A stretch of 63,024 nucleotides of DNA, filler included, from Octopus bimaculoides (taxonomy: Eukaryota): the NCBI RefSeq assembly GCF_001194135.2. It is 3 parts of 3 records of this genome, joined end to end, with 100 filler letters (N's around TTAATTAATTAA, not from the genome) between each part and the next. Parts side by side here need not be neighbours in the genome. Positions count along the whole stretch, not along the records: positions 28,982 to 58,381 come from NC_068999.1; 2 more parts are not named here. One strand, 5' to 3'. The position numbers and the translations under genes are program-made. Positions 16,489 to 49,257 of this stretch are shown piece by piece (positions within the stretch are counted from its first letter, which is position 1; each line of letters opens with the position of its first letter). The notes under the pieces were generated by a model. The model had not been told where the DNA came from, searched no databases, and was given only the letters and a program-made list of their open reading frames with translations.

Positions 16489-16699
16489 ATATGTATGAAT
16501 ATACGTACATATGTGAGTATATGTATGTATGCTTGTATGTATGAATGTATATGTGTATGTAGATATATATGTATATATTATATCGTTTGATGTTTTCATA
16601 AAGAAGATGATAAATAAACAATGTCCTATCGCTGATATTTAGATAAGAACAACGTTGTAATCTAAATGTAACTCTTCATATCGAATTGCTTAAACTTTA

Positions 16700-16880
16700 A
16701 CATGATGAGTAAAAGCACACAAGTTTTTAGAAAAACCTTACATATTTTTACTACTCCACTTACAGATTGTATGTGACGCATGAATGTTAGCTGGTCGCTC
16801 CCTTTGTCCGAAAGCTTTAGCTTTTCGAGATTACTACTTCGATATTTTACTAACATAACAAAGTACACTATCAATTTTAG
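16700..16880 (-). mobile_element. Highly diverged family B LINE C-terminal fragment
   Basis: SNLEKLKLS...HIQSVSGVVKICKVF aligns by eye with NINLEKLGFS...QIKSITGTVKICKTF at 20030-20230. Confidence 0.5.
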
Positions 16881-16901
16881 GAATAAATGAGAATTTATAT
16901 A

Positions 16902-17425
16902 CCGTAAGGCCTCGATATACGAGTTAATTTATCCCGGAGATCACTCGTAAAACGACAACTCGTAAAGCAGAGCAATACTTTCCCATTGTAGCAATGTTGT
17001 AAAATCGTAGTTCGTTCCCAGAAAAATATTTTACCTATAAATTTATGACAGTCGTTAATAAATGGCAATAAAACAACAGTAGAATGTAAAGAATAATTTA
17101 TGTGGTGAAGTAAAAAGAATGTTGAGATATTATTATTATCGTTTTCTAAATCACTTTCACTCGCACTAGACTTGCGCAAACCATCACTTGTAGATGTGAT
17201 CGCCGATTCACAAGCACTCGTAGACGGACTTGTAAATTTCTTTTTAAAATACAAGTCTACAATTGTCTACTTAGAAGAAGCTTTTAATCGCTCTCTATAG
17301 ATTTCCAGGTAACTCGCAGAAGCATTTGTTATGGTAGTGGAAACTTTTGCATTTCGTTCAAAATTTGGATCTTGTGCTTGAAAAATTTCAATTAACCCGG
17401 GGGAACGTAAAGCGAGGTATTACTG
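16902..17425 (-). mobile_element. Tigger/pogo-like non-autonomous element
   Basis: TA|ccgtaaggcctcg ... cgaggtattactg|TA termini; the minus strand retains a transposase-like C-terminal TIVDLYFKKKFTSPSTS. Confidence 0.7.
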
Positions 17426-17908
17426 TACTGGGCAAAAAAGCTATAAGTTTCGAAACGTACATAGATATTCACTTCNNNNNNNNNNNNNNNNNNNNNNNNN
17501 NNNNNNNNNNNNNNNNNNNNNNNNNNNNNNNNNNNNNNNNNNNNNNNNNNNNNNNNNNNNNNNNNNNNNNNNNNNNNNNNNNNNNNNNNNNNNNNNNNNN
17601 NNNNNNNNNNNNNNNNNNNNNNNNNNNNNNNNNNNNNNNNNNNNNNNNNNNNNNNNNNNNNNNNNNNNNNNNNNNNNNNNNNNNNNNNNNNNNNNNNNNN
17701 NNNNNNNNNNNNNNNNNNNNNNNNNNNNNNNNNNNNNNNNNNNNNNNNNNNNNNNNNNNNNNNNNNNNNNNNNNNNNNNNNNNNNNNNNNNNNNNNNNNN
17801 NNNNNNNNNNNNNNNNNNNNNNNNNNNNNNNNNNNNNNNNNNNNNNNNNNNNNNNNNNNNNNNNNNNNNNNNNNNNNNNNNNNNNNNNNNNNNNNNNNNN
17901 NNNNNNNN

Positions 17909-32527: not shown

Positions 32528-35328
32528 TTTCCCTAACATTCCAAGTAATTGTTTTTGAAGCCTTTTCCTGTCTCTTGTTGGCCGCTGCCTCGTCGGGTTA
32601 CGACCTCCCAGAAAGAGAAAAGTACACAGGGGGTGGGGGTGGGGGGAAACAAAGGTTTTTATGCCACGTGAAAAGAAGCTCATATTTATTGCGGTTATAA
32701 AGTGTAATGCGGTGGGAATCTCCCAGTCGACTTAAGTTCAAACCTGGTTACCACGTTCAAGGTCAAAATATGAGCCACAGAAAGTCGTCCACAATAATTT
32801 CTTTGTGTATTTTCTCAGTTATTTACCCAGCTTTACTAAACTTGTTCAGAATTAATTTTTTTCATTAAGGTTACCATCTCTCAGGTTGCTCTTTCGATAC
32901 ATTTTTTTTGTTTAAGTTGTGTTTTTTTTTGTTTTTTTCAACGGTGCATGCAGGCATTACTGTGTGGTCAAGAAGCTCGCTTTTCAACCACGTTGTTTTG
33001 GGTTCAATCCTGCTGACACAGAAGATATGAAAGAAATATAGATAAGTTTCAACGACTGGAACAGAGACAAACAGTGGAAATGAGGTAATAAATAAAATAT
33101 GAATAAAATCTATAGTTGTAACTGATTTGGTTGTCTTGCTTCGTATGTCAAATGAAGCTGAAAACTTGAAACAAACAAAGATTATTTGTTTGTTTGTTTG
33201 CTTGCTTTTTAGAAAATACACGCGAAAGACAATTTTGATAGAAATTACGTGCTGAAGATATATATATTCAAATTGAAGATCGTTTTTCCTGTAGACACAA
33301 GAATAACATTTGAAAGATCTACATTTAACTGACAGACATTCGTTGTGTGACATAAGACATATACGTACATAATAACTGCACTAGCCAGAATAACTGACAT
33401 ACATTGAAAGAATCGTTGACTTACACAGTAGGTCGTTAACATAATGTCGGGAAGAAAATTAGAAAAATTACCCAGGGATGCTCGGTGCTAGAAAACTTCA
33501 TGGTTTTCTGATTTAGGCACAATGCCAGCAACTACGTTTAAATATATACATATATATATGCACATATACATATATATACATATATAAACACTATATATAN
33601 NNNNNNNNNNNNNNNNNNNNNNNNNNNNNNNNNNNNNNNNNNNNNNNNNNNNNNNNNNNNNNNNNNNNNNNNNNNNNNNNNNNNNNNNNNNNNNNNNNNN
33701 NNNNNNNNNNNNNNNNNNNNNNNNNNNNNNNNNNNNNNNNNNNNNNNNNNNNNNNNNNNNNNNNNNNNNNNNNNNNNNNNNNNNNNNNNNNNNNNNNNNN
33801 NNNNNNNNNNNNNNNNNNNNNNNNNNNNNNNNNNNNNNNNNNNNNNNNNNNNNNNNNNNNNNNNNNNNNNNNNNNNNNNNNNNNNNNNNNNNNNNNNNNN
33901 NNNNNNNNNNNNNNNNNNNNNNNNNNNNNNNNNNNNNNNNNNNNNNNNNNNNNNNNNNNNNNNNNNNNNNNNNNNNNNNNNNNNNNNNNNNNNNNNNNNN
34001 NNNNNNNNNNNNNNNNNNNNNNNNNNNNNNNNNNNNNNNNNNNNNNNNNNNNNNNNNNNNNNNNNNNNNNNNNNNNNNNNNNNNNNNNNNNNNNNNNNNN
34101 NNNNNNNNNNNNNNNNNNNNNNNNNNNNNNNNNNNNNNNNNNNNNNNNNNNNNNNNNNNNNNNNNNNNNNNNNNNNNNNNNNNNNNNNNNNNNNNNNNNN
34201 NNNNNNNNNNNNNNNNNNNNNNNNNNNNNNNNNNNNNNNNNNNNNNNNNNNNNNNNNNNNNNNNNNNNNNNNNNNNNNNNNNNNNNNNNNNNNNNNNNNN
34301 NNNNNNNNNNNNNNNNNNNNNNNNNNNNNNNNNNNNNNNNNNNNNNNNNNNNNNNNNNNNNNNNNNNNNNNNNNNNNNNNNNNNNNNNNNNNNNNNNNNN
34401 NNNNNATATATGTACATATATACATATATATATATGTATGTATATACACGTGCGACACACACACACACCCACACACACACAGATTCACGGACAAGCGCAC
34501 ATACAAAGATATCTGTAGTCAGGGTGCATTTGGTACTACCAGAAGTGTGCGCATGTGTATGTGCGTGTGTGTGTGTGTGTGTGTGTGTGCGTGTGCGTGT
34601 GTGTGTGCTGTAATATTCCCCCAAATACAAACGTAAGAGCAAGCAGACAACAACAAATAAATACACACACATACACACGCATACAAACACACAAACACAC
34701 AAACACAAACACGCACACACACATATAGCAAGCAGACACGCACATACTCACGCACACGCGCCCGAGCGAACGCCACACGGAGATAAGGAAGAGTGCGAAT
34801 CCGCGAGTACAAAAATCTATTCTGTGGCGACAAGTGAAGATAATTTTTTCTCAGCCGGAGGAAACAAACGACTCATTGAAAAGTCATTCTGGTTAGAAAA
34901 TGGCGGGGCTGGGGCGTGAGGGTGGCAGGGTAAAACTAGAACGATTTAACCCAGTTGGAAGTGATGGAAAGGACGGCGGGGATGTGGAGGTTGGTGCGAT
35001 GAATGCACTTGTACTACATAACGTCGCTGTCCATGACACAGTTTGGTGCCACTGACATTTACGTGGCTTACCAGAATAGCAGCCAGTCGCACAAATTCTC
35101 GCTCTTTCACACAAATATGCATATAATACACAATCTGACAATCTACTCACTCTCCGTAGTAACTATATACATATGTGTATGTGTGTGTGTGTGTGTGTGT
35201 GTACGTGTGTCGCACGTGTGTGTGTTTATATATATATATATATATATATTGCTTAATTAAATGGAGTCGCATGAAACGATCGTACTACATTACATACAAA
35301 TATATATATACACACACATTTATATATT

Positions 35329-39545: not shown

Positions 39546-39782
39546 AGACGTATTATAAGAAAATTATCATATGGATGCGTAATATTTTATATGGATTGGC
39601 GTGACAAGGTAACGTAACGAGCGGGGGAAATTTTCCCAGGGACGTCATTCGCAAGTAATCTACGGAAAGCAAAATAAGTAGCAACGGCTGAGTTAAGTGT
39701 ACTAGATATGTAGGAAATGGTTTACGGGGAGTAACAAGAATACGTGTTTCTATGGAATTGTTAATATGTATTTATCTACTTA

Positions 39783-40390
39783 GGTGACGAGCTGGCAGAA
39801 ACGTTAGCACGCCGGGCGAAATGCTTAGCGGTATTTCGTCTGCCGTTACATTCTAAGTTCATATTCCGCCGAGGTCGACTTTGCCTTTCATCCTTTCGGG
39901 GTCGATTAAATAAGTACCAGTTACGCTCTGGGTCGATGTAATCGACTTAATCCCTTTGTGTGTCCTTGTTTGTCCCCTCTATGTTTAGCCCCTTGTGGGC
40001 AATAAAGAAATAAGAAACGTTAACACGCCGGGAGAAATGCTTAGAGGTATTTCGTCCGTTTTTACGTTCTGAGTTCAAATTCCGCCGAAGTCAATAAGTA
40101 CCTGTTGAGCACTGGGGCCGATGTAATTGGCTTATCCCCTCCTCCGACCTTGCTAGCCTAGTGCCAAAATTTGAAATCAATATGAAGGTGTCAAGTTAGC
40201 AGAATCTTTAGCACACCTTTAGCATTTTGCCTGCTTTTACGTTTTGAGTTCAATTTCCACCGAGGTTGATTGTGCCTTTCATCCTTACAAGGTTGATAAA
40301 ATAAGTACCAGTTGAGCACTGGGGCTGACGTAATCGACTTATCCCTTTCCACGAAATTGCTGGCCTTGTGCTAAAATTTGAAACCAGTGT
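39783..40390 (+). mobile_element. Cluster of three S1 SINE copies
   Basis: Same head and core repeated head-to-tail. Confidence 0.8.
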
Positions 40391-41799: not shown

Positions 41800-42835
41800 G
41801 TTTCCAATCTTGACACAAGACCAGCAGATTTGGGAGAAAGGGCAAGTCGATTACAATGGCCCCGGTGTTTAACTGGTACTTATTTTATTGACCCCAAAAG
41901 GCCAAAATGCTAAGTCGATCTCGCCGAAATTTGAACTCAGAACGTAAAGATGGACGAAATGCAGCAAAGCAGTTTTGCTCGGCGTGCTAACGATTCTGCC
42001 AGCACGCAACTTTAATAAACAATGATGTAGGTTTCAAATTTTAGCACAAGGCCAGCAATTTTATAGGACGGAGTAAGTTAATTACATCCACACCAGTGCA
42101 CAACTGATACTTACTTTATTGACCCCGAAAGGATTAACCCCTTGAGCCCTGACCGCCTGAACCTTATTTTACTCCAACGATGTATTCATAATCTCGGCAT
42201 ATACAAAATATTCTTTTCTACTCTAGGCACAAGGCCCGAAATTTTTGGGGAGCGGGATCCAGTAGATTAAATCGACCCCAGTACGCAACTGGTACTTGAT
42301 TTATCGACCCCGAAAGGATGAAAGGCAAATTCGACCTCGGCGGAATTTGAACTCAGAACGTAAAGACAGAGGAAATACCGCTAAGCATTTCGCCCTGGGT
42401 GTTAACGTTTCTGCCAGCTCGTCCGCCTATATATACAAACTATTAAAAAAACGAATTATATATCCGGTAAGTTTCAAATTCATGTTTTCTCAAATTCTTC
42501 TTTCTAGAAGATTCTTCAGTTTCATTTTCAAAATAATCAACTTTCCGTTAGTCACTCGTAGGTCAATGATGCTAATGTAGGAACAACAAAACATATTTAG
42601 AATGAATTCTATTTAGACCAACTGGTGCTACGGTACAGAGCGGTACTATGGTATAGAGCGGTACTACGGTATAGAGAAATATAAGCCATCCACCGATAAA
42701 CCGGTGTGACGGCCTGAAAAGGTTAAAAGCGAAGTCGATGTCGCCGAAATTCGAACTCAGAACATAAAGACGGACAAAATAGCAGTAAGCATTTTTTTGT
42801 CCGGCATGCTAATGACTCTGCCAGTTGGCTGCCTT
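41800..42835 (-). mobile_element. Cluster of three S1 SINE copies (one split by a MITE, one nested inside that MITE)
   Basis: Reverse-complement S1 sequence at 41800-42010, 42030-42133 plus 42723-42835, and 42213-42428. Confidence 0.8.
42138..42722. mobile_element. piggyBac-like MITE with TTAA target duplication
   Basis: TTAA at 42134-42137 and 42723-42726; imperfect CC...GG inverted termini; it splits a SINE that is continuous once the insert is removed; internal 18-bp tandem repeat near 42627-42676. Confidence 0.7.
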
Positions 42836-43790
42836 ATGTTAGAGTAGTATATTAAGAGCCAGTTCCTCTTTGTCTTCACAAAAATCTAAAAGATTGTTCC
42901 CGAAAATTGTTGTCATGGTAACCAGAACATCGAATAATAAATGAATAAATAAGCGAGTAGTTTTTTTTTATATATTTCTCTAGATGACGAACTAACCTTG
43001 TAATTTGATTTTAAACACACGCACACGCGCGCACANNNNNNNNNNNNNNNNNNNNNNNNNNNNNNNNNNNNNNNNNNNNNNNNNNNNNNNNNNNNNNNNN
43101 NNNNNNNNNNNNNNNNNNNNNNNNNNNNNNNNNNNNNNNNNNNNNNNNNNNNNNNNNNNNNNNNNNNNNNNNNNNNNNNNNNNNNNNNNNNNNNNNNNNN
43201 NNNNNNNNNNNNNNNNNNNNNNNNNNNNNNNNNNNNNNNNNNNNNNNNNNNNNNNNNNNATATATATATGTATGTGTGTGTGTGTGTATAAGTAAAAATT
43301 TACTGTTCTCCGTATATGTGTACACAGATATAGACACACACACAATAACATATATGACGTAATTTATTCTGTTATAGAATATTTTCTGGAAGTCTGAGAA
43401 CGCTAGAGAAACCAGTTGTTCTAAATAGATTTCATTCTAAATATGTTTTGTTGTTCCAACCTGACATCATCGACCTACGGTTGACAGTAACGGAAAGTTA
43501 ATCATTTGAAAATCAAACTGAAAAATCTTCTAGAAAGAAGATTTTGAGAAAACACGAATTTGAAAACTTACCGGATATATAATGTTTTTTTTAAATATTT
43601 TGTATATGCTGAGATTATAAATACATCGTTGATATTAAATTTTGGACAAGAACAGAGCCATTGTAATTTGATAAAAAAATAGTCAAGAGATTTACATCAA
43701 AGTATTTCCAGGAATAATTCAAGCAAACAACCTTCGAATTCTGAGGGAAAATTTGCGTCTGAAAAATAATAAAAAAATAAATAAATAAAA

Positions 43791-46043
43791 ATGAATAATC
43801 ACAGACATAAAGCAAGAAATCAAAACTCTTATGAGAAATCTGTAACTTTTGAAGATATTAAAAAATTGATGAAGATTCTCAATCAGAAACTTAATGTCGC
43901 TATAAAAGAGGAAGTTACTTTCTCGACAGGGGATCATAGCAATGCTATGGTTGAAGATGTGATGGAAACACCGGTTCACGGCCAATATAAAAGTGTTACA
44001 AAGTCTAAAATGTCTGCTGATGCCCCGGAATTTATCCCAAGATCTCAGCAACTGATTCAGTTGAAATCTATCTTTAATCATTTTCCTTTTGAAAATAACA
44101 ACAGCGAAGAGACTTTGATGGTTCCGTCGAGTACAATAGGAAACGAGGGAGCCGTGCAAATGAACGAAGCTAGTAAAAGCACCAACAAAATTAGCATTTG
44201 TTTTCCACCTCCTCCCGCTGAACAAGAAGAAATTAAAAATGCTGCGAAAGATGTTTCTCAAGTAACAACTTGTGCTGTGAAGTCAGAGACTGAAGATGAG
44301 AGGAAAATAGATGAAGCTAAAGAAGAGGTTACTTCTAGTAATGAAGAAATACTGAATGCTGTACCAGGGACGAACCAAACGAATTTGAAACATATCAATC
44401 GGAATTTTTCAGCTATTGATAAAGGAAATTATGATGATAATGAAGAGAGCACTAATTATGAATGTGTGAAGGAGATGCTGGGAGAAACTAAACGCTACAT
44501 AGAAACTGAAGTAGATAAAGATCAAATGGAAAATTGTGAGGAAGCAGACGACAACAGGGATACAAGTGTGCTGTGTCTTTCACCAGTGAATGATGAAGGA
44601 AAAGAGGAATCTGTCAGCAATATCGATACTACAAATAATGCTGATGACAGTGTGATTGAAGAAATATCCAGCGATGATCAATCAAAGTCAAAAGATGAAA
44701 TATCTGTCTCACAGGAGAAACCAGAAGATGTGGAAGCTAATACAATACCGAACGTGGAAGAAAGTGAAACCAAAGATAAGGATGAAGATGAGATAAATAG
44801 TACAGATTGTGAAACTGTGCAAGGTGGGGATATTAGCAGTCGATTGAGGGCCGAAATGTTGGCCTTAATTAATAAAGGAAGAAAGTCGGACGACGATGAG
44901 GATGAAAATAATGTCGCGAATGATGAAGAAATTAACTCGAGTAACAGCAGTAAAGTTGCTGAATATAAAACCAGTCCAGAAGCAAAAGAAGATTTAGTGG
45001 ATTCAAATGAACATTCAGCCGAAGAATGCTGCAAAGATCAGAGCTTGTTTACAAATAAAAACGAAAACATGTCTGCGAAGAAAGAAGAAGCTTTAGAAAG
45101 TACAAAGGACAAAAACGAACGCGGTACTCTGAGTAACTGTAATGAAATTAATATTGTTGGTGTTAATAAGAGAGAAAAACATTTTAATGATGTTAATGAG
45201 ACAAGTTCTAATACCGATACCATTTCTACTATTGATGACGAGAATGATACCGATCACACGGAACAAAGCAGCGTTGAATTATCAACGGAACCTTTTAATA
45301 AATCTCAGAACTCGGAATCGTATGACATGGACTCTACAGTTCCGCTTTGTCACAATACAACACCAAAATACGTTCCGCTACAGAGTGGAAACATATCTGT
45401 TTGTCTTTTCACTGGGAAAGAAAACAGTAATAACAACACATATGAAACTTTACAATCGAACCAAAGGATGTTTAGAACTGGAGAATATTCAAGCGAAAAG
45501 AAAGGCCAGCTAAATGACTATATTAGTAAAATGAAGGAACTGAAGACCAGCCAAGAAGAATTCAGGAAGAAATGGAATTCCAATTTAAGTAAAAGAGAAC
45601 ATGCCTATTATACTTACTTAAAATGTACTGAGAAAGCTAAAATCTATCGGGCGTGGGCTGCAAACGTCCCTACAATTCTACCAACGAAATTATGGAATAC
45701 GAAAAAACAAAACAGCTTGAAATGGCAAAGCATTTCAGATGACATCAGTCTGTTGTGTTTGAAGTCTGAAGTGGTTCTTTCAAAGATGAAAGCTGATAAA
45801 CACAAGGATAAATACGAGGAAATTGACCGAAAAATGATATCCAGCATTCAAGAGGAGAACAACAGCAAAAGCGAACAGAATGTGCTGGAAAATGCATGGA
45901 AGAAAGCAACAAACACTGAAGAACAGATGGCGCGTGAAATGTGGAGTTACAGGCGGAAATGGTTAGAAAACTATGCCAAGTTTTACCAAAAGCCAGAAAT
46001 AATTGATAAAATGAGTAGCATGGCTGGTAAAAGACTGAGATGA
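43791..46043 (+). CDS. Intronless 750-aa uncharacterised protein: N-terminal helix, PAM2 motif, FPPPP motif, acidic/Asn-Ser-rich disordered region, helical C-terminal domain
   Basis: 2253-nt uninterrupted ORF in ~65% AT DNA. ATG has A at -3 (aaaATGa) with an in-frame TAA three codons upstream. No microsatellite, SINE or gap inside it, although both flanks are full of them. Confidence 0.85.
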   Translation: MNNHRHKARNQNSYEKSVTFEDIKKLMKILNQKLNVAIKEEVTFSTGDHSNAMVEDVMETPVHGQYKSVTKSKMSADAPEFIPRSQQLIQLKSIFNHFPFENNNSEETLMVPSSTIGNEGAVQMNEASKSTNKISICFPPPPAEQEEIKNAAKDVSQVTTCAVKSETEDERKIDEAKEEVTSSNEEILNAVPGTNQTNLKHINRNFSAIDKGNYDDNEESTNYECVKEMLGETKRYIETEVDKDQMENCEEADDNRDTSVLCLSPVNDEGKEESVSNIDTTNNADDSVIEEISSDDQSKSKDEISVSQEKPEDVEANTIPNVEESETKDKDEDEINSTDCETVQGGDISSRLRAEMLALINKGRKSDDDEDENNVANDEEINSSNSSKVAEYKTSPEAKEDLVDSNEHSAEECCKDQSLFTNKNENMSAKKEEALESTKDKNERGTLSNCNEINIVGVNKREKHFNDVNETSSNTDTISTIDDENDTDHTEQSSVELSTEPFNKSQNSESYDMDSTVPLCHNTTPKYVPLQSGNISVCLFTGKENSNNNTYETLQSNQRMFRTGEYSSEKKGQLNDYISKMKELKTSQEEFRKKWNSNLSKREHAYYTYLKCTEKAKIYRAWAANVPTILPTKLWNTKKQNSLKWQSISDDISLLCLKSEVVLSKMKADKHKDKYEEIDRKMISSIQEENNSKSEQNVLENAWKKATNTEEQMAREMWSYRRKWLENYAKFYQKPEIIDKMSSMAGKRLR

Positions 46044-46225
46044 ATTGTTAAAAATGGTAATTCCCTTCAATATGCTTCTCATTTAACAATTTTCATTGGG
46101 TTTTTCTATTTAAATATTATTAACTATGTTGTTAATTACTTTTCATTGAATGTCACAGCACAAGAACAGTTTCTTGGGTTTGTAAGAAATTTATATTATT
46201 ATTATTATCATTATTATTATTGTCA

Positions 46226-46539: not shown

Positions 46540-46583
46540 AATAAAATTTATAAGGAATTTTTAAAGTAACAATTAAAAATAAA
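46540..46583 (+). promoter_or_regulatory. Candidate polyadenylation signals (AATAAA at 46540-46545 and 46578-46583) for the 750-aa ORF
   Basis: Two AATAAA hexamers ~500 nt after the stop codon; weak evidence in such AT-rich DNA. Confidence 0.3.
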
Positions 46584-47360
46584 GATGTACTTGGAAAGTT
46601 TAAAAAAAAAAGAAGATATTAATTTTATTCTAGCGATGTACTTCTTTCTCTTCTTCTTCTTTCCTGTCCAATATCGCTGTGTGGTGAAACGTTAGCTATG
46701 GAGTGTTATTGTATATTGTGTTGCGACCACAGTACACGGGAGGGAATCTGGCGATAGCCAATCATTATTAGAAATATTATAATTGGAATGTCGCCGGTGA
46801 CGACAAAACTTAGGAAAATAAAACTGATTTCAAATTTTGGCACAAAGCCAGCAATTTCGGAGGAGGGGATGAGTTGAATGCATCGACCCACCAGTGCTCA
46901 ACTGGTACTTATTTTATCGACCCAGAAAGGATGAAAGGCAAAGTCGACCTTGGCGGAATTCGAACTCAGAATGTAAAGACGACTTAGCAAATGATGAATG
47001 TGGAGACGGAGAAAATGGTCGGTGGGATACATTCTGAATTTTTCATTTTTTTAAATCCTTTATTTGTTTTAGTCATTGGATTGCCGCCATGTTAGAGCAT
47101 CGCCTTGAGGGGCTTTAGTTAGACAGGTCGACTCGACCACAGAATTTTATTTTTTGTCAAGTCTTATTTTATCGTTCTGTTTTGCCGAACCGCTAATTGG
47201 CGAGAAATAAGGCTTTGCTTACAACACCTTGCTCATTCACCTAAGTACTATCTAGGCCCTCGATGTTGCTTAAGTTCGGTGGAGAATCGGTGTTTTCAAC
47301 GTTATATAGTTGTAAGCAAGATTATTATTAAATAACAATTATGGTTTAATATAACTAAAA

Positions 47361-47757: not shown

Positions 47758-49257
47758 TTATGGTTTAATATAACTAAAACACAAAGGAATTCGAAAACCT
47801 CTCAAACTTAACACAATTGTTTAACTATTATTTCCAATGTTAGTAAATTACTTCTAAATTATTTATACATTGTACTAACAATTTAGATTGCTTTCTGCTA
47901 TGATAATAAGAGCTTGATTCTAAGGCGGTGAGGGGGAAGCATCGTTAGCATGCCAGGCGGTATTTCGTCTATCGTTACGTTCTGAGTTCAAATCCCGCCG
48001 AGGTCGACTTCACATTTCATCCTTTCGGGGTCGATAAAATAAGTACCAGTTGTGCACTGGGGGTCGATGTAATCAGCTTAGCGTCTCATTCCCCGAAATT
48101 TCTGGCCTTGTACCAAAATTTGAAAACATGATTAATTATAGTCGCATTCATGGAACAAGGGCCAAGGTTAGGTGTATAGCATCTAGAATAATGTCAAGCA
48201 CTCACACCCTCTACAAGGGCCGTTTTAGCAATATTATTGGGTCCCCGCGTAAGTCAATGCACAGGGTCCAATTCTATTTATTTGTTGATAGTAAGCCACA
48301 ACATACATAGATTTGAACTGCGCTCTGTAAACACGTGAGGTCCCCAGGTAACTAACTGCCCAGCGTGCACGTACCTTAAAACGACACTAACCTCTACCCA
48401 GGGTCAATCAAAGGTACCGGCTCATTGGGTGGTCGTCCGGGGTGTCACTCCATGTATCTGGGATATTACAAAATACAATACAAAGAAAAGAAACATCGCC
48501 ATTTCAACATGGCTGTTTCGTTGAAACCGACGTTGAAGTGGCGATAAAATTACTTCTCAGTTTTATCACTGCTTCCATTCTGTTTTTCTAATTTGCTAAC
48601 TTGTTTAATACAAAGAAAGATAAATTCTATAATTTCTTTAGCAATTCCGTCAGTGGAAAATGATATCGTAAAAAAAAGATGTAGGAAATGGTTTAAAAAA
48701 AAACAGCAACAACAACAACACACATTTTTAGATCTAAAGTAGAGCAAGAATTATTTTAGGAAAATATATATTCTCCAGGATTTGTTCTTTTGGGTGAATT
48801 CTTTTCGCTACAAGAGATCGTCACTTTTAGAACTTTCCATATAGCCATCTTCTTCTACCCAGTGTTCTTAACAAAACTGTTGAAATCATGGTCAACAATG
48901 TAGATACTCTCTCTCTCTATCTCTCTCTCTATATATGTACCTTTGTCGCTTCCCCCTCCCTCTTTATTTCTCTCTCACAGTTATATTAATGAAAGGTTTT
49001 TTAAAAATCTAATATTTTGTAACAACTGTTCTCTTTCATCTTTGTATCGTAATAAAGATTTTATGCACAAGTTATGCAGTTTTTGTTTTTTTTTGTAATT
49101 ATTTACATAAAAAGAATTATACTTGTAAAGGCGCCGAATTTCTATTTTTTTTCCCCGGGACGCCTTCAGCCTTAGGCTCGGTCGGGCTTTTACTAGTCGT
49201 GCAATGCGTCCAATGGGACTTTCCACCTTATTTTGTAGAGGCCGAGGAGTTGGCAGT

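What the first reader, a model, noticed from the sequence alone, without database searches (positions are those of the whole stretch)
43791..46043. Intact intronless 750-aa orphan ORF standing alone in decayed repeat DNA
Seen: 2.25 kb with no stop, microsatellite or SINE, while every transposon ORF in the window is broken. It has its own ATG after an in-frame stop. The layout is modular: N-terminal amphipathic helix (FEDIKKLMKILNQKLNVAI), two short linear motifs, ~400 aa of acidic disorder containing one isolated helix (SRLRAEMLALINKGRK), and a folded-looking C-terminus. Inference: a lineage-specific scaffold protein under purifying selection, or a very young insertion. I do not recognise it as any named gene.
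Basis: partly seen in the sequence, partly recalled or inferred. Interest (0 to 1): 0.78.

Follow-up and report, generated by a model that had tools for sequence, protein, structure and literature searches.

The report
Domesticated retrotransposon ORF1 gene with PAM2
The 750-codon ORF is a real, old, strongly constrained single-exon gene of octopods whose C-terminal domain was recruited from the ORF1 protein of a Penelope-like retrotransposon and whose N-terminus carries a conserved poly(A)-binding-protein docking motif, so it is probably a transposon-derived mRNA-regulating adaptor, not an orphan and not a young insertion.

Summary
43791..46043 (+) is an intact 750-aa ORF with an in-frame TAA three codons upstream, and chance cannot explain it (P about 1e-23).

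It is a real gene:
- Single-exon orthologues lie at a colinear locus in Octopus vulgaris (94% aa identity) and in Argonauta hians (62%).
- dN/dS is 0.10-0.135 overall and 0-0.05 in the terminal modules.
- Against Argonauta, DNA similarity stops at the ORF borders.
- A more distant contig (L003) keeps the same two modules.

It is not an orphan. A profile of the C-terminus finds about 100 protein clusters (E down to 1e-14). In all four loci inspected, these lie just upstream of a reverse-transcriptase ORF; a C-terminal GIY-YIG endonuclease was scored in L007. That makes them ORF1 proteins of Penelope-like elements, one of them in Octopus sinensis. The host gene has no ORF2 nearby and forms its own clade (196/200 bootstraps).

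With the deep alignment, AlphaFold models the domain confidently (pLDDT 91.5) as a long three-helix bundle. It has no known structural relative.

The N-terminal module contains MSADAPEFIP, which matches the PAM2 consensus LNxxAxEFxP. It is conserved in all orthologues and absent from all TE copies.

Best reading: a domesticated PLE ORF1 (an L1TD1-like case) that docks on PABP. The function is inferred, not shown.

The parts
43782..43784 (+). In-frame TAA stop three codons upstream of the start codon
   Evidence: Read directly from the sequence. DNA similarity to the Argonauta locus begins at 43771, only 20 nt upstream of the ATG.
43791..46043 (+). Complete single-exon CDS, 750 aa plus stop
   Evidence: Listed by the ORF listing. 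Orthologues are P0002 (O. vulgaris) and P0003 (Argonauta hians). Both are single-exon genes on chromosome-scale scaffolds. Overall dN/dS is 0.135 and 0.10.
43836..44054 (+). Conserved N-terminal module, residues about 16-88: amphipathic helix 20-46, a disordered linker, then PAM2
   Evidence: Residues 1-103 are nearly invariant between Octopus and Argonauta, with dN/dS 0.013-0.017. Identity to the distant orthologue on L003 is 52% over residues 1-88. AlphaFold predicts helix 20-46.
44001..44048 (+). PAM2-type motif, residues 71-86 SKMSADAPEFIPRSQQ (core 74-83 MSADAPEFIP)
   Evidence: PF07145 PAM2 is the top Pfam hit in three orthologues, at 17.0, 18.4 and 14.5 bits against a cutoff of 20. The motif fits the consensus LNxxAxEFxP from PMC7356810. 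The regex occurs in 24 of 200,000 composition-preserving shuffles. KSKMSADAxEFxP is the longest run conserved with L003. The motif is absent from all 100 TE ORF1 proteins.
44202..44216 (+). FPPPP motif (residues 138-142), resembling an EVH1 ligand
   Evidence: F138 and P139-P141 are invariant in the three octopod proteins, but Argonauta reads FPPPS and L003 lacks the motif. This is weak evidence and was only noted.
44100..45512 (+). Acidic, low-complexity, predicted-disordered middle region (residues 104-574)
   Evidence: Net charge is -62. pLDDT is below 50 nearly throughout. dN/dS is 0.22-0.39, and length changes among the octopod orthologues leave the reading frame open. The region is not alignable with L003.
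44820..44879 (+). Conserved island with an isolated helix (residues 344-363, GGDISSRLRAEMLALINKG)
   Evidence: It is almost invariant among the three octopods: 0 nonsynonymous against 3 synonymous changes versus O. vulgaris. AlphaFold predicts helix 348-362. It is not conserved in L003.
45183..45290 (+). Second conserved island, rich in S, T, D and E (residues 465-500, FNDVNETSSNTDTISTID..TDHTEQSSVELS)
   Evidence: dN/dS is 0 against O. vulgaris and 0.04 against Argonauta. It is not conserved in L003. Its function is unknown.
45543..46004 (+). Penelope-like-element ORF1-derived domain (residues 585-738), a basic elongated three-helix bundle
   Evidence: A profile search of 1.84 billion proteins gave 101 hits at E <= 1e-3, all to this stretch. 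tblastn of family members against the piece hits only 45489-46034, with E down to 2e-16 for TE copies. The family signature residues W595, L599, R602, Y619, W622, P631, K633, D679, L699, W703, E711 and W718 are all retained. The AlphaFold model has pLDDT 91.5 and pTM 0.81. dN/dS is 0-0.05.
46540..46545 (+). Candidate poly(A) signal AATAAA about 500 nt after the stop; a second one lies at 46578-46583
   Evidence: Read from the sequence. This is unverified, because such hexamers are frequent by chance in AT-rich DNA.

Best explanation
This is a host gene made from a retrotransposon protein.

Origin (inferred from shown homology). An ancestor of octopods, probably earlier in cephalopods, kept the ORF1 coding sequence of a Penelope-like element (PLE). 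PLEs are retroelements whose ORF2 encodes a reverse transcriptase plus a GIY-YIG endonuclease. The retained copy lost the ORF2 and the basic Q/N/R-rich tail that TE ORF1 proteins carry. It kept the ORF1 core: a basic, elongated three-helix bundle.

Added parts (shown). The gene also has an N-terminal module with an amphipathic helix and a PAM2 peptide, and a long acidic disordered spacer of about 470 residues.

Proposed mechanism (inferred):
- The PAM2 peptide docks into the MLLE domain of cytoplasmic poly(A)-binding protein, placing the protein on polyadenylated mRNPs.
- The ORF1-derived bundle supplies whatever ORF1 does for the element. The most likely activities are RNA or RNP binding and self-association, and possibly co-assembly with PLE ORF1 proteins.
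- The acidic spacer separates and tunes the two ends.
- The net result is a cephalopod-specific post-transcriptional adaptor, comparable to mammalian L1TD1, which is a domesticated LINE-1 ORF1.

Shown: gene reality, orthology, selection, homology to PLE ORF1, absence of ORF2, motif conservation.
Inferred: direction of transfer, PABP binding, RNA binding, cellular role.
For: Real, conserved gene:
- Orthologues in O. vulgaris and Argonauta hians are single-exon.
- The window is colinear with the O. vulgaris locus from about 36.2 to 50.5 kb.
- dN/dS is 0.135 against O. vulgaris at dS 0.20. It is about 0.10 against Argonauta at saturated dS, and 0-0.05 in the N- and C-terminal modules.
- Similarity to Argonauta DNA is confined to 43771-46046.
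- A distant orthologue on L003 keeps only the N-terminal module (52% identity) and the C-terminal domain (51%).

Transposon origin of the C-terminal domain:
- 101 representative proteins match residues about 585-738, with E from 1.7e-14 to 1e-3 in a library of 1.84 billion.
- Family members P0109, P0011, P0013 and P0005 each lie directly upstream of an ORF2.
- RVT_1 scores on the ORF2 in L007, L005 and L004. L007 also carries GIY-YIG at 24.6 bits, above the 22.6 cutoff, plus a CX4CxxC linker. RT plus a C-terminal GIY-YIG is the defining PLE architecture (PMC8557442).
- P0005 is an Octopus sinensis protein, and it is the nearest TE relative of the octopod genes.

Domestication:
- No ORF2 remnant lies in the window piece or within about 10 kb of the gene in the other three host loci.
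- The host genes are monophyletic in 196 of 200 bootstraps. They are about as far from TE ORF1s (median distance 2.13) as TE ORF1s are from each other (1.9).

Fold: pLDDT 91.5, three long helices.

PAM2. The motif is absent from TE copies and lies in a segment modelled as disordered.

Precedent: L1TD1 (PMC4161310, PMC11925450).
Against: - There is no expression data. No transcript or protein with exactly this sequence is on record, and the gene is unannotated in the window's species.
- PAM2 scores stay below Pfam's curated cutoff (14.5-18.4 against 20 bits). Positions 3 and 4 are M and S rather than L and N.
- No biochemical function is known for any PLE ORF1. The fold has no significant neighbour in the PDB or BFVD, so RNA binding and oligomerisation are argued only by analogy and from the +13 charge.
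- The direction of transfer (TE to host) rests on parsimony, not on a rooted tree. The sister group is unresolved.
- Taxon labels for most TE copies, and for L003, could not be obtained.
- The L003 copy is split by a frame change at an A-run. This could be an assembly error or a loss of function in that lineage.
Confidence: 0.6

Rival explanations
1. It is simply a copy of a transposable-element ORF1 (a young or still-mobile insertion), not a host gene.
For: The C-terminal domain is homologous to PLE ORF1 proteins. The surrounding DNA is repeat-rich.
Against: - The gene sits at an orthologous, colinear position in O. vulgaris and is intact in Argonauta despite dS > 2.
- dN/dS is 0-0.05 in the modules.
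- TE relatives are only 20-30% identical.
- There is no RT or GIY-YIG remnant within the piece or at the orthologous loci.
- Only one protein per species was found.
Confidence: 0.02
2. The transfer went the other way. An old host gene encoding the three-helix domain was captured by Penelope-like elements as their ORF1, and the octopod gene is the surviving donor lineage.
For: The tree is unrooted and the sister group of the host clade is unresolved. Canonical EN+ PLEs are described as single-ORF elements (PMC8557442), so ORF1 could be an acquisition. TE capture of additional ORFs is documented for other retroelements (abstract of PMC5408684, listed).
Against: - Only two host-type clusters (P0001, P0004) were found among 1.84 billion representatives, against about 99 TE-type clusters.
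- The host clade is no more distant from TE copies than TE copies are from one another.
- PAM2 and the acidic region are absent from every TE copy. A capture would therefore have had to take only the domain.
Confidence: 0.1
3. It is a domesticated ORF1 that serves mainly as a retroelement restriction or partner factor. It co-assembles with PLE ORF1 proteins through the shared bundle, either poisoning their RNPs or helping them. The PAM2-like sequence would be incidental or secondary.
For: All family signature residues of the bundle are retained, so hetero-assembly is plausible. PLEs of this family live in Octopus genomes (L004). [quoted passage not shown]
Against: - Very strong purifying selection, with no nonsynonymous change in the domain between two Octopus species, is not the arms-race signature expected of a restriction factor.
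- The PAM2 core is the best-conserved run in the N-terminal module at deep divergence, which argues that it matters.
Confidence: 0.2
4. It is a nuclear acidic scaffold or chaperone, for example a histone- or chromatin-binding protein, unrelated to mRNA. The PAM2 match would be a chance resemblance.
For: The protein has a very long D/E/S-rich region with net charge -62. PAM2 is below Pfam's cutoff.
Against: The motif is specific (24 of 200,000 shuffles) and conserved in all orthologues, including L003. The acidic region is the least conserved part. No nuclear-protein domain was detected.
Confidence: 0.08

Closest known systems
L1TD1 (mammalian gene domesticated from LINE-1 ORF1p)
   Same: Both are host genes whose coding sequence derives from the ORF1 protein of a non-LTR-type retroelement. 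Both are retained at a fixed locus, have lost the ORF2, and contain an acidic or disordered region. [quoted passage not shown]
   Different: - The source element is different: Penelope-like with RT plus GIY-YIG, not LINE-1.
- The fold is different: a three-helix bundle here, against coiled coil + RRM + CTD in L1 ORF1p (from my own knowledge).
- No sequence similarity between the two was detected.
- L1TD1 shows positive selection and repeated losses, whereas this gene is under strong purifying selection.
- This gene has a PAM2 motif.
ORF1 proteins of two-ORF Penelope-like elements (unnamed family; e.g. XP_036365366.1 of Octopus sinensis; an unrelated-by-name ORF1 is noted in a killifish Neptune element, bioRxiv 10.1101/2025.05.22.655539)
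   Same: The approximately 155-residue domain is homologous (E down to 1.7e-14), with all signature residues (W..L..R, IY..W, P.LP.K, D, W, EE, W). AlphaFold predicts the same three-helix bundle when given the family alignment.
   Different: - TE copies are 200-450 aa, have a basic Q/N/R/H-rich C-terminal tail, and are followed by an RT-containing ORF2 in the four loci inspected (GIY-YIG scored in L007).
- The octopod gene has no ORF2 and no tail, and showed one protein per species in the protein search.
- It carries about 580 extra N-terminal residues, including PAM2.
PAM2-containing PABP partners (PAIP1/2, ataxin-2, eRF3, Tob, PAN3, GW182, LARP4, USP10, NFX1, HELZ)
   Same: The protein has a 12-residue LNxxAxEFxP-type peptide in a disordered region, with the key Phe at position 10, Ala at position 7 and Pro at position 12 (consensus from PMC7356810).
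   Different: There is no homology to any of these proteins outside the motif. Positions 3 and 4 are M and S. Binding is untested, and the Pfam score is below the cutoff.
Gag-derived domesticated genes (Arc, PNMA, PEG10/RTL)
   Same: These follow the same evolutionary logic: a retroelement's structural or RNA-packaging protein is recruited as a host gene (from my own knowledge).
   Different: Those derive from LTR-retrotransposon capsid folds. Nothing capsid-like was found here.

Membership tests
PLE ORF1 protein family (sequence family) | Significant sequence homology over the conserved approximately 155-residue domain | tested here: met
   hmmsearch gave 101 hits at E <= 1e-3, the best TE copy at 1.7e-14, all to residues about 585-738. 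tblastn gave E down to 2e-16.
PLE ORF1 protein family (sequence family) | Retention of the invariant or near-invariant signature residues | tested here: met
   R602, W622, P631, D679, W703 and W718, together with W595, L599, Y619, K633, L699 and E711, are all present.
Penelope-like element (as a mobile element copy) | ORF1 followed by an ORF2 encoding RT plus GIY-YIG endonuclease | tested here: not met
   tblastn with two PLE ORF2 proteins gave no hit in the window piece, L001, L002 or L003. The control locus L004 gave E = 5e-95.
Penelope-like element (as a mobile element copy) | Hammerhead-ribozyme-bearing pseudo-LTRs | tested here: inconclusive
   Rfam found nothing at gathering score in the window. 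It also found nothing in the four TE loci, so the test has no positive control.
Penelope-like element (as a mobile element copy) | Multiple dispersed near-identical copies | not testable with these tools
   No cephalopod whole-genome search was available. Only one protein per species was found in the protein collection.
Domesticated transposon gene | Orthologous, syntenic position in different species | tested here: met
   The window is colinear with the O. vulgaris locus over about 14 kb. Single-exon orthologues lie on chromosome-scale scaffolds in two other species.
Domesticated transposon gene | Purifying selection on the TE-derived coding sequence | tested here: met
   For residues 575-750 there are 0 nonsynonymous against 12 synonymous changes versus O. 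vulgaris, and dN/dS is 0.044 versus Argonauta.
Domesticated transposon gene | Expression and a host function | not testable with these tools
   No RNA-seq or proteomics access. The exact-sequence look-up found no record.
PAM2-containing PABP-interacting proteins | Match to the PAM2 consensus LNxxAxEFxP or the Pfam PF07145 model | tested here: inconclusive
   MSADAPEFIP matches A7, E9, F10 and P12, with conservative M3 and S4. Pfam scores are 14.5-18.4 bits against a cutoff of 20 in three orthologues. The regex occurs in 24 of 200,000 shuffles.
PAM2-containing PABP-interacting proteins | Motif lies in an intrinsically disordered segment and is evolutionarily conserved | tested here: met
   pLDDT is below 50 for residues 42-82. 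KSKMSADAxEFxP is invariant in four orthologues.
PAM2-containing PABP-interacting proteins | Direct binding to the MLLE domain of PABPC | not testable with these tools
   This needs a binding assay or a complex prediction.
EVH1 (Ena/VASP) ligands | FPx(phi)P core conserved, with acidic flanks | tested here: not met
   The motif reads FPPPP in the two Octopus species, FPPPS in Argonauta, and is absent in L003.

The most novel reading that the evidence does not exclude
This may be the first host gene known to derive from the ORF1 of a Penelope-like retroelement. It would be a cephalopod innovation that fuses a retroelement RNP-forming three-helix bundle to a PABP-docking PAM2 peptide. That would create a lineage-specific regulator of polyadenylated RNAs, host mRNAs and/or retroelement transcripts, in an animal group noted for unusual RNA biology. 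As a by-product it defines and gives a confident fold for a previously uncharacterised PLE ORF1 protein family.
Probability: 0.3. Interest if true: 0.75.

Novelty: new variant of a known kind. Interest (0 to 1): 0.6.

Why it matters
- Domestication of retroelement structural proteins (Arc, PEG10, L1TD1) is a recognised source of new genes. I found no example from Penelope-like elements in the literature I could search.
- The ORF1 proteins of PLEs are essentially uncharacterised. This locus supplies a conserved host derivative, a family alignment of about 100 members, and a confident structural model, all of which make the PLE ORF1 function experimentally approachable.
- If the PAM2 motif binds PABP, the gene is a cephalopod-specific link between a transposon-derived domain and the poly(A) machinery.
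- Practically, the gene is unannotated in the window's species and labelled 'hypothetical' in the other two, so annotation can be improved now.

Tried and rejected
1. Word-indexed protein searches were insensitive. The search with the C-terminal 184 residues alone returned nothing, not even the protein itself. A 20-sequence domain profile returned only 4 unnamed proteins. The exhaustive HMMER search was what revealed the family.
2. I suspected by eye that the N-terminal helix (EDIKKLMKILNQKLNV) is homologous to the N-terminal helix of TE ORF1s. It is not supported. The best phmmer E-value was about 0.03 in a set of 68 sequences. hhalign gave E = 0.5, while the reversed control gave 0.05. The origin of the N-terminal module remains unknown.
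3. Full-length AlphaFold with 3 sequences gave pLDDT 36 and was usable only for secondary structure.
4. Foldseek of the confident domain model found no match at E <= 0.001 in the PDB or BFVD. Profile searches of PDB sequences for either module gave only non-significant chance hits.
5. Pfam finds nothing for the TE ORF1 proteins.
6. Rfam found no hammerhead ribozymes in the TE loci or the window.
7. Attempts to get organism names for family members gave only one label, Octopus sinensis. The taxon of L003 is unknown, and it shares no repeats with octopod loci.
8. The exact-sequence look-up of the window's protein, tried for transcript evidence, found no record.
Full report
**1. The observation**

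The ORF is there exactly as described. It runs 43791..46043 on the + strand, 750 codons from an ATG. An in-frame TAA lies three codons upstream, at 43782-43784.

It is the outstanding ORF of the 29.4-kb piece. Every other real ORF is under 200 aa; the 295-410 aa calls at 33.5-34.7 kb run through an assembly gap. With the piece's base composition a codon is a stop with probability 0.068. A 750-codon open stretch then has probability 1.3e-23, or about 8e-19 over all positions and strands. No tandem repeat lies inside it.

- AlphaFold and DSSP give helices at residues 20-46 and 348-362 and an all-helical C-terminus from residue 568.
- Residues 104-574 are acidic, with net charge -62 and no Trp.
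- The last 176 residues are basic (+13) and contain all seven Trp.

**2. It is a real, old, constrained gene**

The protein collection holds two relatives:
- a 'hypothetical predicted protein' of Octopus vulgaris, 760 aa, 92-94% identical;
- a 'hypothetical protein' of Argonauta hians, 782 aa, 59-62% identical.

Both are single-exon genes on chromosome-scale scaffolds, with no other called gene within 10 kb. The window's own protein is not on record anywhere, so the gene is unannotated in the window's species.

The window is colinear with the O. vulgaris locus from about 36.2 to 50.5 kb, with lineage-specific repeats interspersed. Nucleotide identity there is 93.0% in the ORF, against 89.7% in the 5' flank and 86.9% in the 3' flank.

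Nei-Gojobori dN/dS values:

| Region (residues) | vs O. vulgaris | vs Argonauta |
|---|---|---|
| Whole ORF | 0.135 (dS 0.20) | about 0.10 (dS about 2.4, saturated) |
| 1-103 | 0.017 | 0.013 |
| 575-750 | 0 (0 nonsynonymous, 12 synonymous changes) | 0.044 |
| Acidic middle | 0.22-0.39 | about 0.25 |

Among the three octopod orthologues, every length difference leaves the reading frame open. Against Argonauta, alignable DNA is confined to 43771-46046, so conservation stops at the ORF borders.

These results exclude both a chance ORF and a young insertion.

**3. A deeper orthologue**

The closest hit of the exhaustive profile search is P0004 (E = 5e-46). It lies on a 36-kb ENA contig of unknown taxon, L003.

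tblastn with the octopus protein finds two things there:
- the N-terminal module, residues 1-88, 52% identity, including KSKMSADAAEFVPMS;
- 1.1 kb downstream, the C-terminal domain, residues 583-738, 51% identity.

The two reading frames overlap by about 12 nt at an A-run. A one-base homopolymer difference separates the split call from a continuous ORF of about 649 aa. This could be an assembly error or a real frameshift; I cannot tell which.

L003 shares nothing else with the octopod loci at the DNA level. In a four-way alignment only two modules survive at this depth:
- residues about 16-88, comprising the helix and the motif KSKMSADAxEFxP;
- residues 585-738.

The acidic middle and the two octopod-conserved islands (344-363 and 465-500) are not conserved.

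**4. The C-terminal domain comes from a retrotransposon**

A profile of residues 501-750 was searched with HMMER against 1.84 billion representative proteins. It found 101 proteins at E <= 1e-3, and every match was to residues about 585-738.

Apart from the host-type P0001 and P0004, the hits share these features:
- length mostly 200-450 aa;
- identity to the query of 19-28%;
- a clear common signature: W..LN.RK..YW, IY..W, P.LP.KF, ID, LW, EE..S..W, W..Y;
- in the ten read in full, an N-terminal helical region and a basic Q/N/R/H-rich tail.

Pfam knows none of them.

In all four loci where flanks could be inspected, the protein sits directly upstream of a larger ORF (L005, L006 and L007; L004). 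That larger ORF has these features:
- It scores RVT_1 in L007, L005 and L004.
- In L007 it also scores GIY-YIG at 24.6 bits, above the curated 22.6 cutoff.
- In L007 a CX4CxxC motif lies in front of the endonuclease.

A reverse transcriptase with a C-terminal GIY-YIG endonuclease defines EN+ Penelope-like elements. The CX2-5CxxC linker is the mark of the Neptune and Nematis clades (PMC8557442).

One member, P0005, is XP_036365366.1 of Octopus sinensis. It is followed by a degraded PLE ORF2 (tblastn E = 5e-95). PLEs of this type therefore live in octopus genomes.

An uncharacterised ORF1 has also been noted in passing in a killifish Neptune element (bioRxiv 10.1101/2025.05.22.655539).

**5. The octopod gene is a derivative, not a copy**

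- tblastn with two PLE ORF2 proteins finds nothing in the window piece, nor within about 10 kb of the gene in O. vulgaris, Argonauta or L003.
- The family hits the piece only at 45489-46034.
- On a 154-column domain alignment the three host genes form a clade in 196 of 200 NJ bootstraps.
- The median host-TE distance (2.13) is similar to the median TE-TE distance (1.9), so the host clade is one lineage among many. Its sister group is unresolved.

Two host-type clusters against about 99 TE-type clusters, together with single-locus synteny, make TE-to-host domestication the parsimonious direction. The reverse, capture of a host gene by PLEs, is not formally excluded.

**6. Structure**

With only three sequences the full-length model is poor (pLDDT 36). 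With the 102-sequence family alignment, residues 567-750 fold confidently (pLDDT 91.5, pTM 0.81). The model has three long helices of about 57, 47 and 40 residues, plus a short fourth.

Foldseek finds no match at E <= 0.001 in the PDB or BFVD, only generic helical bundles. Sequence-profile searches of the PDB are also empty.

The fold therefore gives no functional transfer. The basic charge, and the role of ORF1 proteins in other retroelements, suggest RNA or RNP binding and self-association. This is inference.

**7. The N-terminal module and PAM2**

Residues 74-83, MSADAPEFIP, fit the canonical PAM2 consensus LNxxAxEFxP (PMC7356810). Ala7, Glu9, Phe10 and Pro12 match exactly. That paper describes Phe10 as a main determinant of MLLE binding. 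Positions 3 and 4 carry the conservative residues Met and Ser.

Supporting evidence:
- PF07145 is the best Pfam hit in each of three orthologues, at 17.0, 18.4 and 14.5 bits. All are just below the 20-bit cutoff, which is usual for an 18-residue model.
- A PAM2 regex occurs in only 24 of 200,000 composition-preserving shuffles of the protein.
- The motif lies in a segment modelled as disordered.
- It is the longest invariant run at the deepest divergence.
- It is absent from all 100 TE ORF1 proteins.

I therefore consider PABP (MLLE) docking the most likely function of this module, at about 55%. It is untested.

The origin of the N-terminal module is unknown. A by-eye resemblance of its helix to the N-terminal helix of TE ORF1s did not survive a profile-profile test with a reversed control.

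**8. Mechanism proposed**

The protein would be a PABP-tethered adaptor. PAM2 places it on poly(A) mRNPs. The ORF1-derived bundle binds RNA or RNPs, or oligomerises, possibly together with PLE ORF1 proteins. The roughly 470-residue acidic disordered region acts as a spacer or regulator.

The closest known system is L1TD1. It is a domesticated LINE-1 ORF1 that binds RNA and still associates with L1 ORF1p (PMC4161310, PMC11925450). The source element, fold and selection regime all differ.

Rival readings and my estimates:
- restriction or partner factor for PLEs, 0.2;
- reverse capture, 0.1;
- nuclear acidic scaffold, 0.08;
- plain TE copy, 0.02.

**9. Verdict**

It is partly wrong: the gene is not an orphan and not a young insertion.

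Novelty: a new variant of a known kind. It is a domesticated retroelement gene, but it comes from a PLE ORF1 and carries a PAM2 motif. I found no precedent for that in the searchable literature. Interest: 0.6.

Noticed in passing
L004:8001-13034; L005:2763-6440; L006:4211-6146; L007:74-3540: These are two-ORF Penelope-like elements. Their ORF1 family (about 100 clusters at 50% identity) has no Pfam model and no literature description that I could find. AlphaFold models its core as a three-helix bundle at pLDDT 91.5. The family deserves its own description.
   Followed up: partly
L003:9881-9894: The distant orthologue is split into two frames at an AACAAAAAATTCTGA homopolymer. The cause is either an assembly indel or a lineage-specific frameshift. 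The organism behind ENA assembly ERZ21867824 could not be identified.
   Followed up: partly
window 44202-44216: An FPPPP motif followed by acidic residues resembles an Ena/VASP EVH1 ligand. It is conserved in the two Octopus species, reads FPPPS in Argonauta, and is missing in L003.
   Followed up: partly
window 39780-40390, 41800-42430, 46825-46985, 47960-48235, 53430-53865, 56890-56990; L001 about 1100-2200 and 16530-17880: A repeat unit of about 184 bp is dispersed many times through the window. In O. vulgaris it forms long head-to-tail arrays at 85-92% identity. It may be a SINE- or satellite-like family. It was not classified.
   Followed up: no
window about 43040-43260 and about 33500-34500: Runs of N (assembly gaps, 1317 N in the piece) lie about 0.5 kb upstream of the gene and about 10 kb upstream. 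The promoter-proximal region is therefore incomplete in this assembly.
   Followed up: no
L004:9227-10718: In the Octopus sinensis PLE copy a tandem repeat array lies between ORF1 and ORF2. It gives repeated ORFs on both strands.
   Followed up: no
L002 about 10420-10500 (Argonauta protein alignment columns 143-165): Argonauta has a 23-residue poly-D/E insertion right after the FPPP motif. This shows how the acidic region expands by in-frame low-complexity growth.
   Followed up: no
window 43719-44261 (-): A 180-aa antisense ORF overlaps the 5' end of the gene. It has a TTG start and no support, and is probably a by-product of the coding strand's composition.
   Followed up: no
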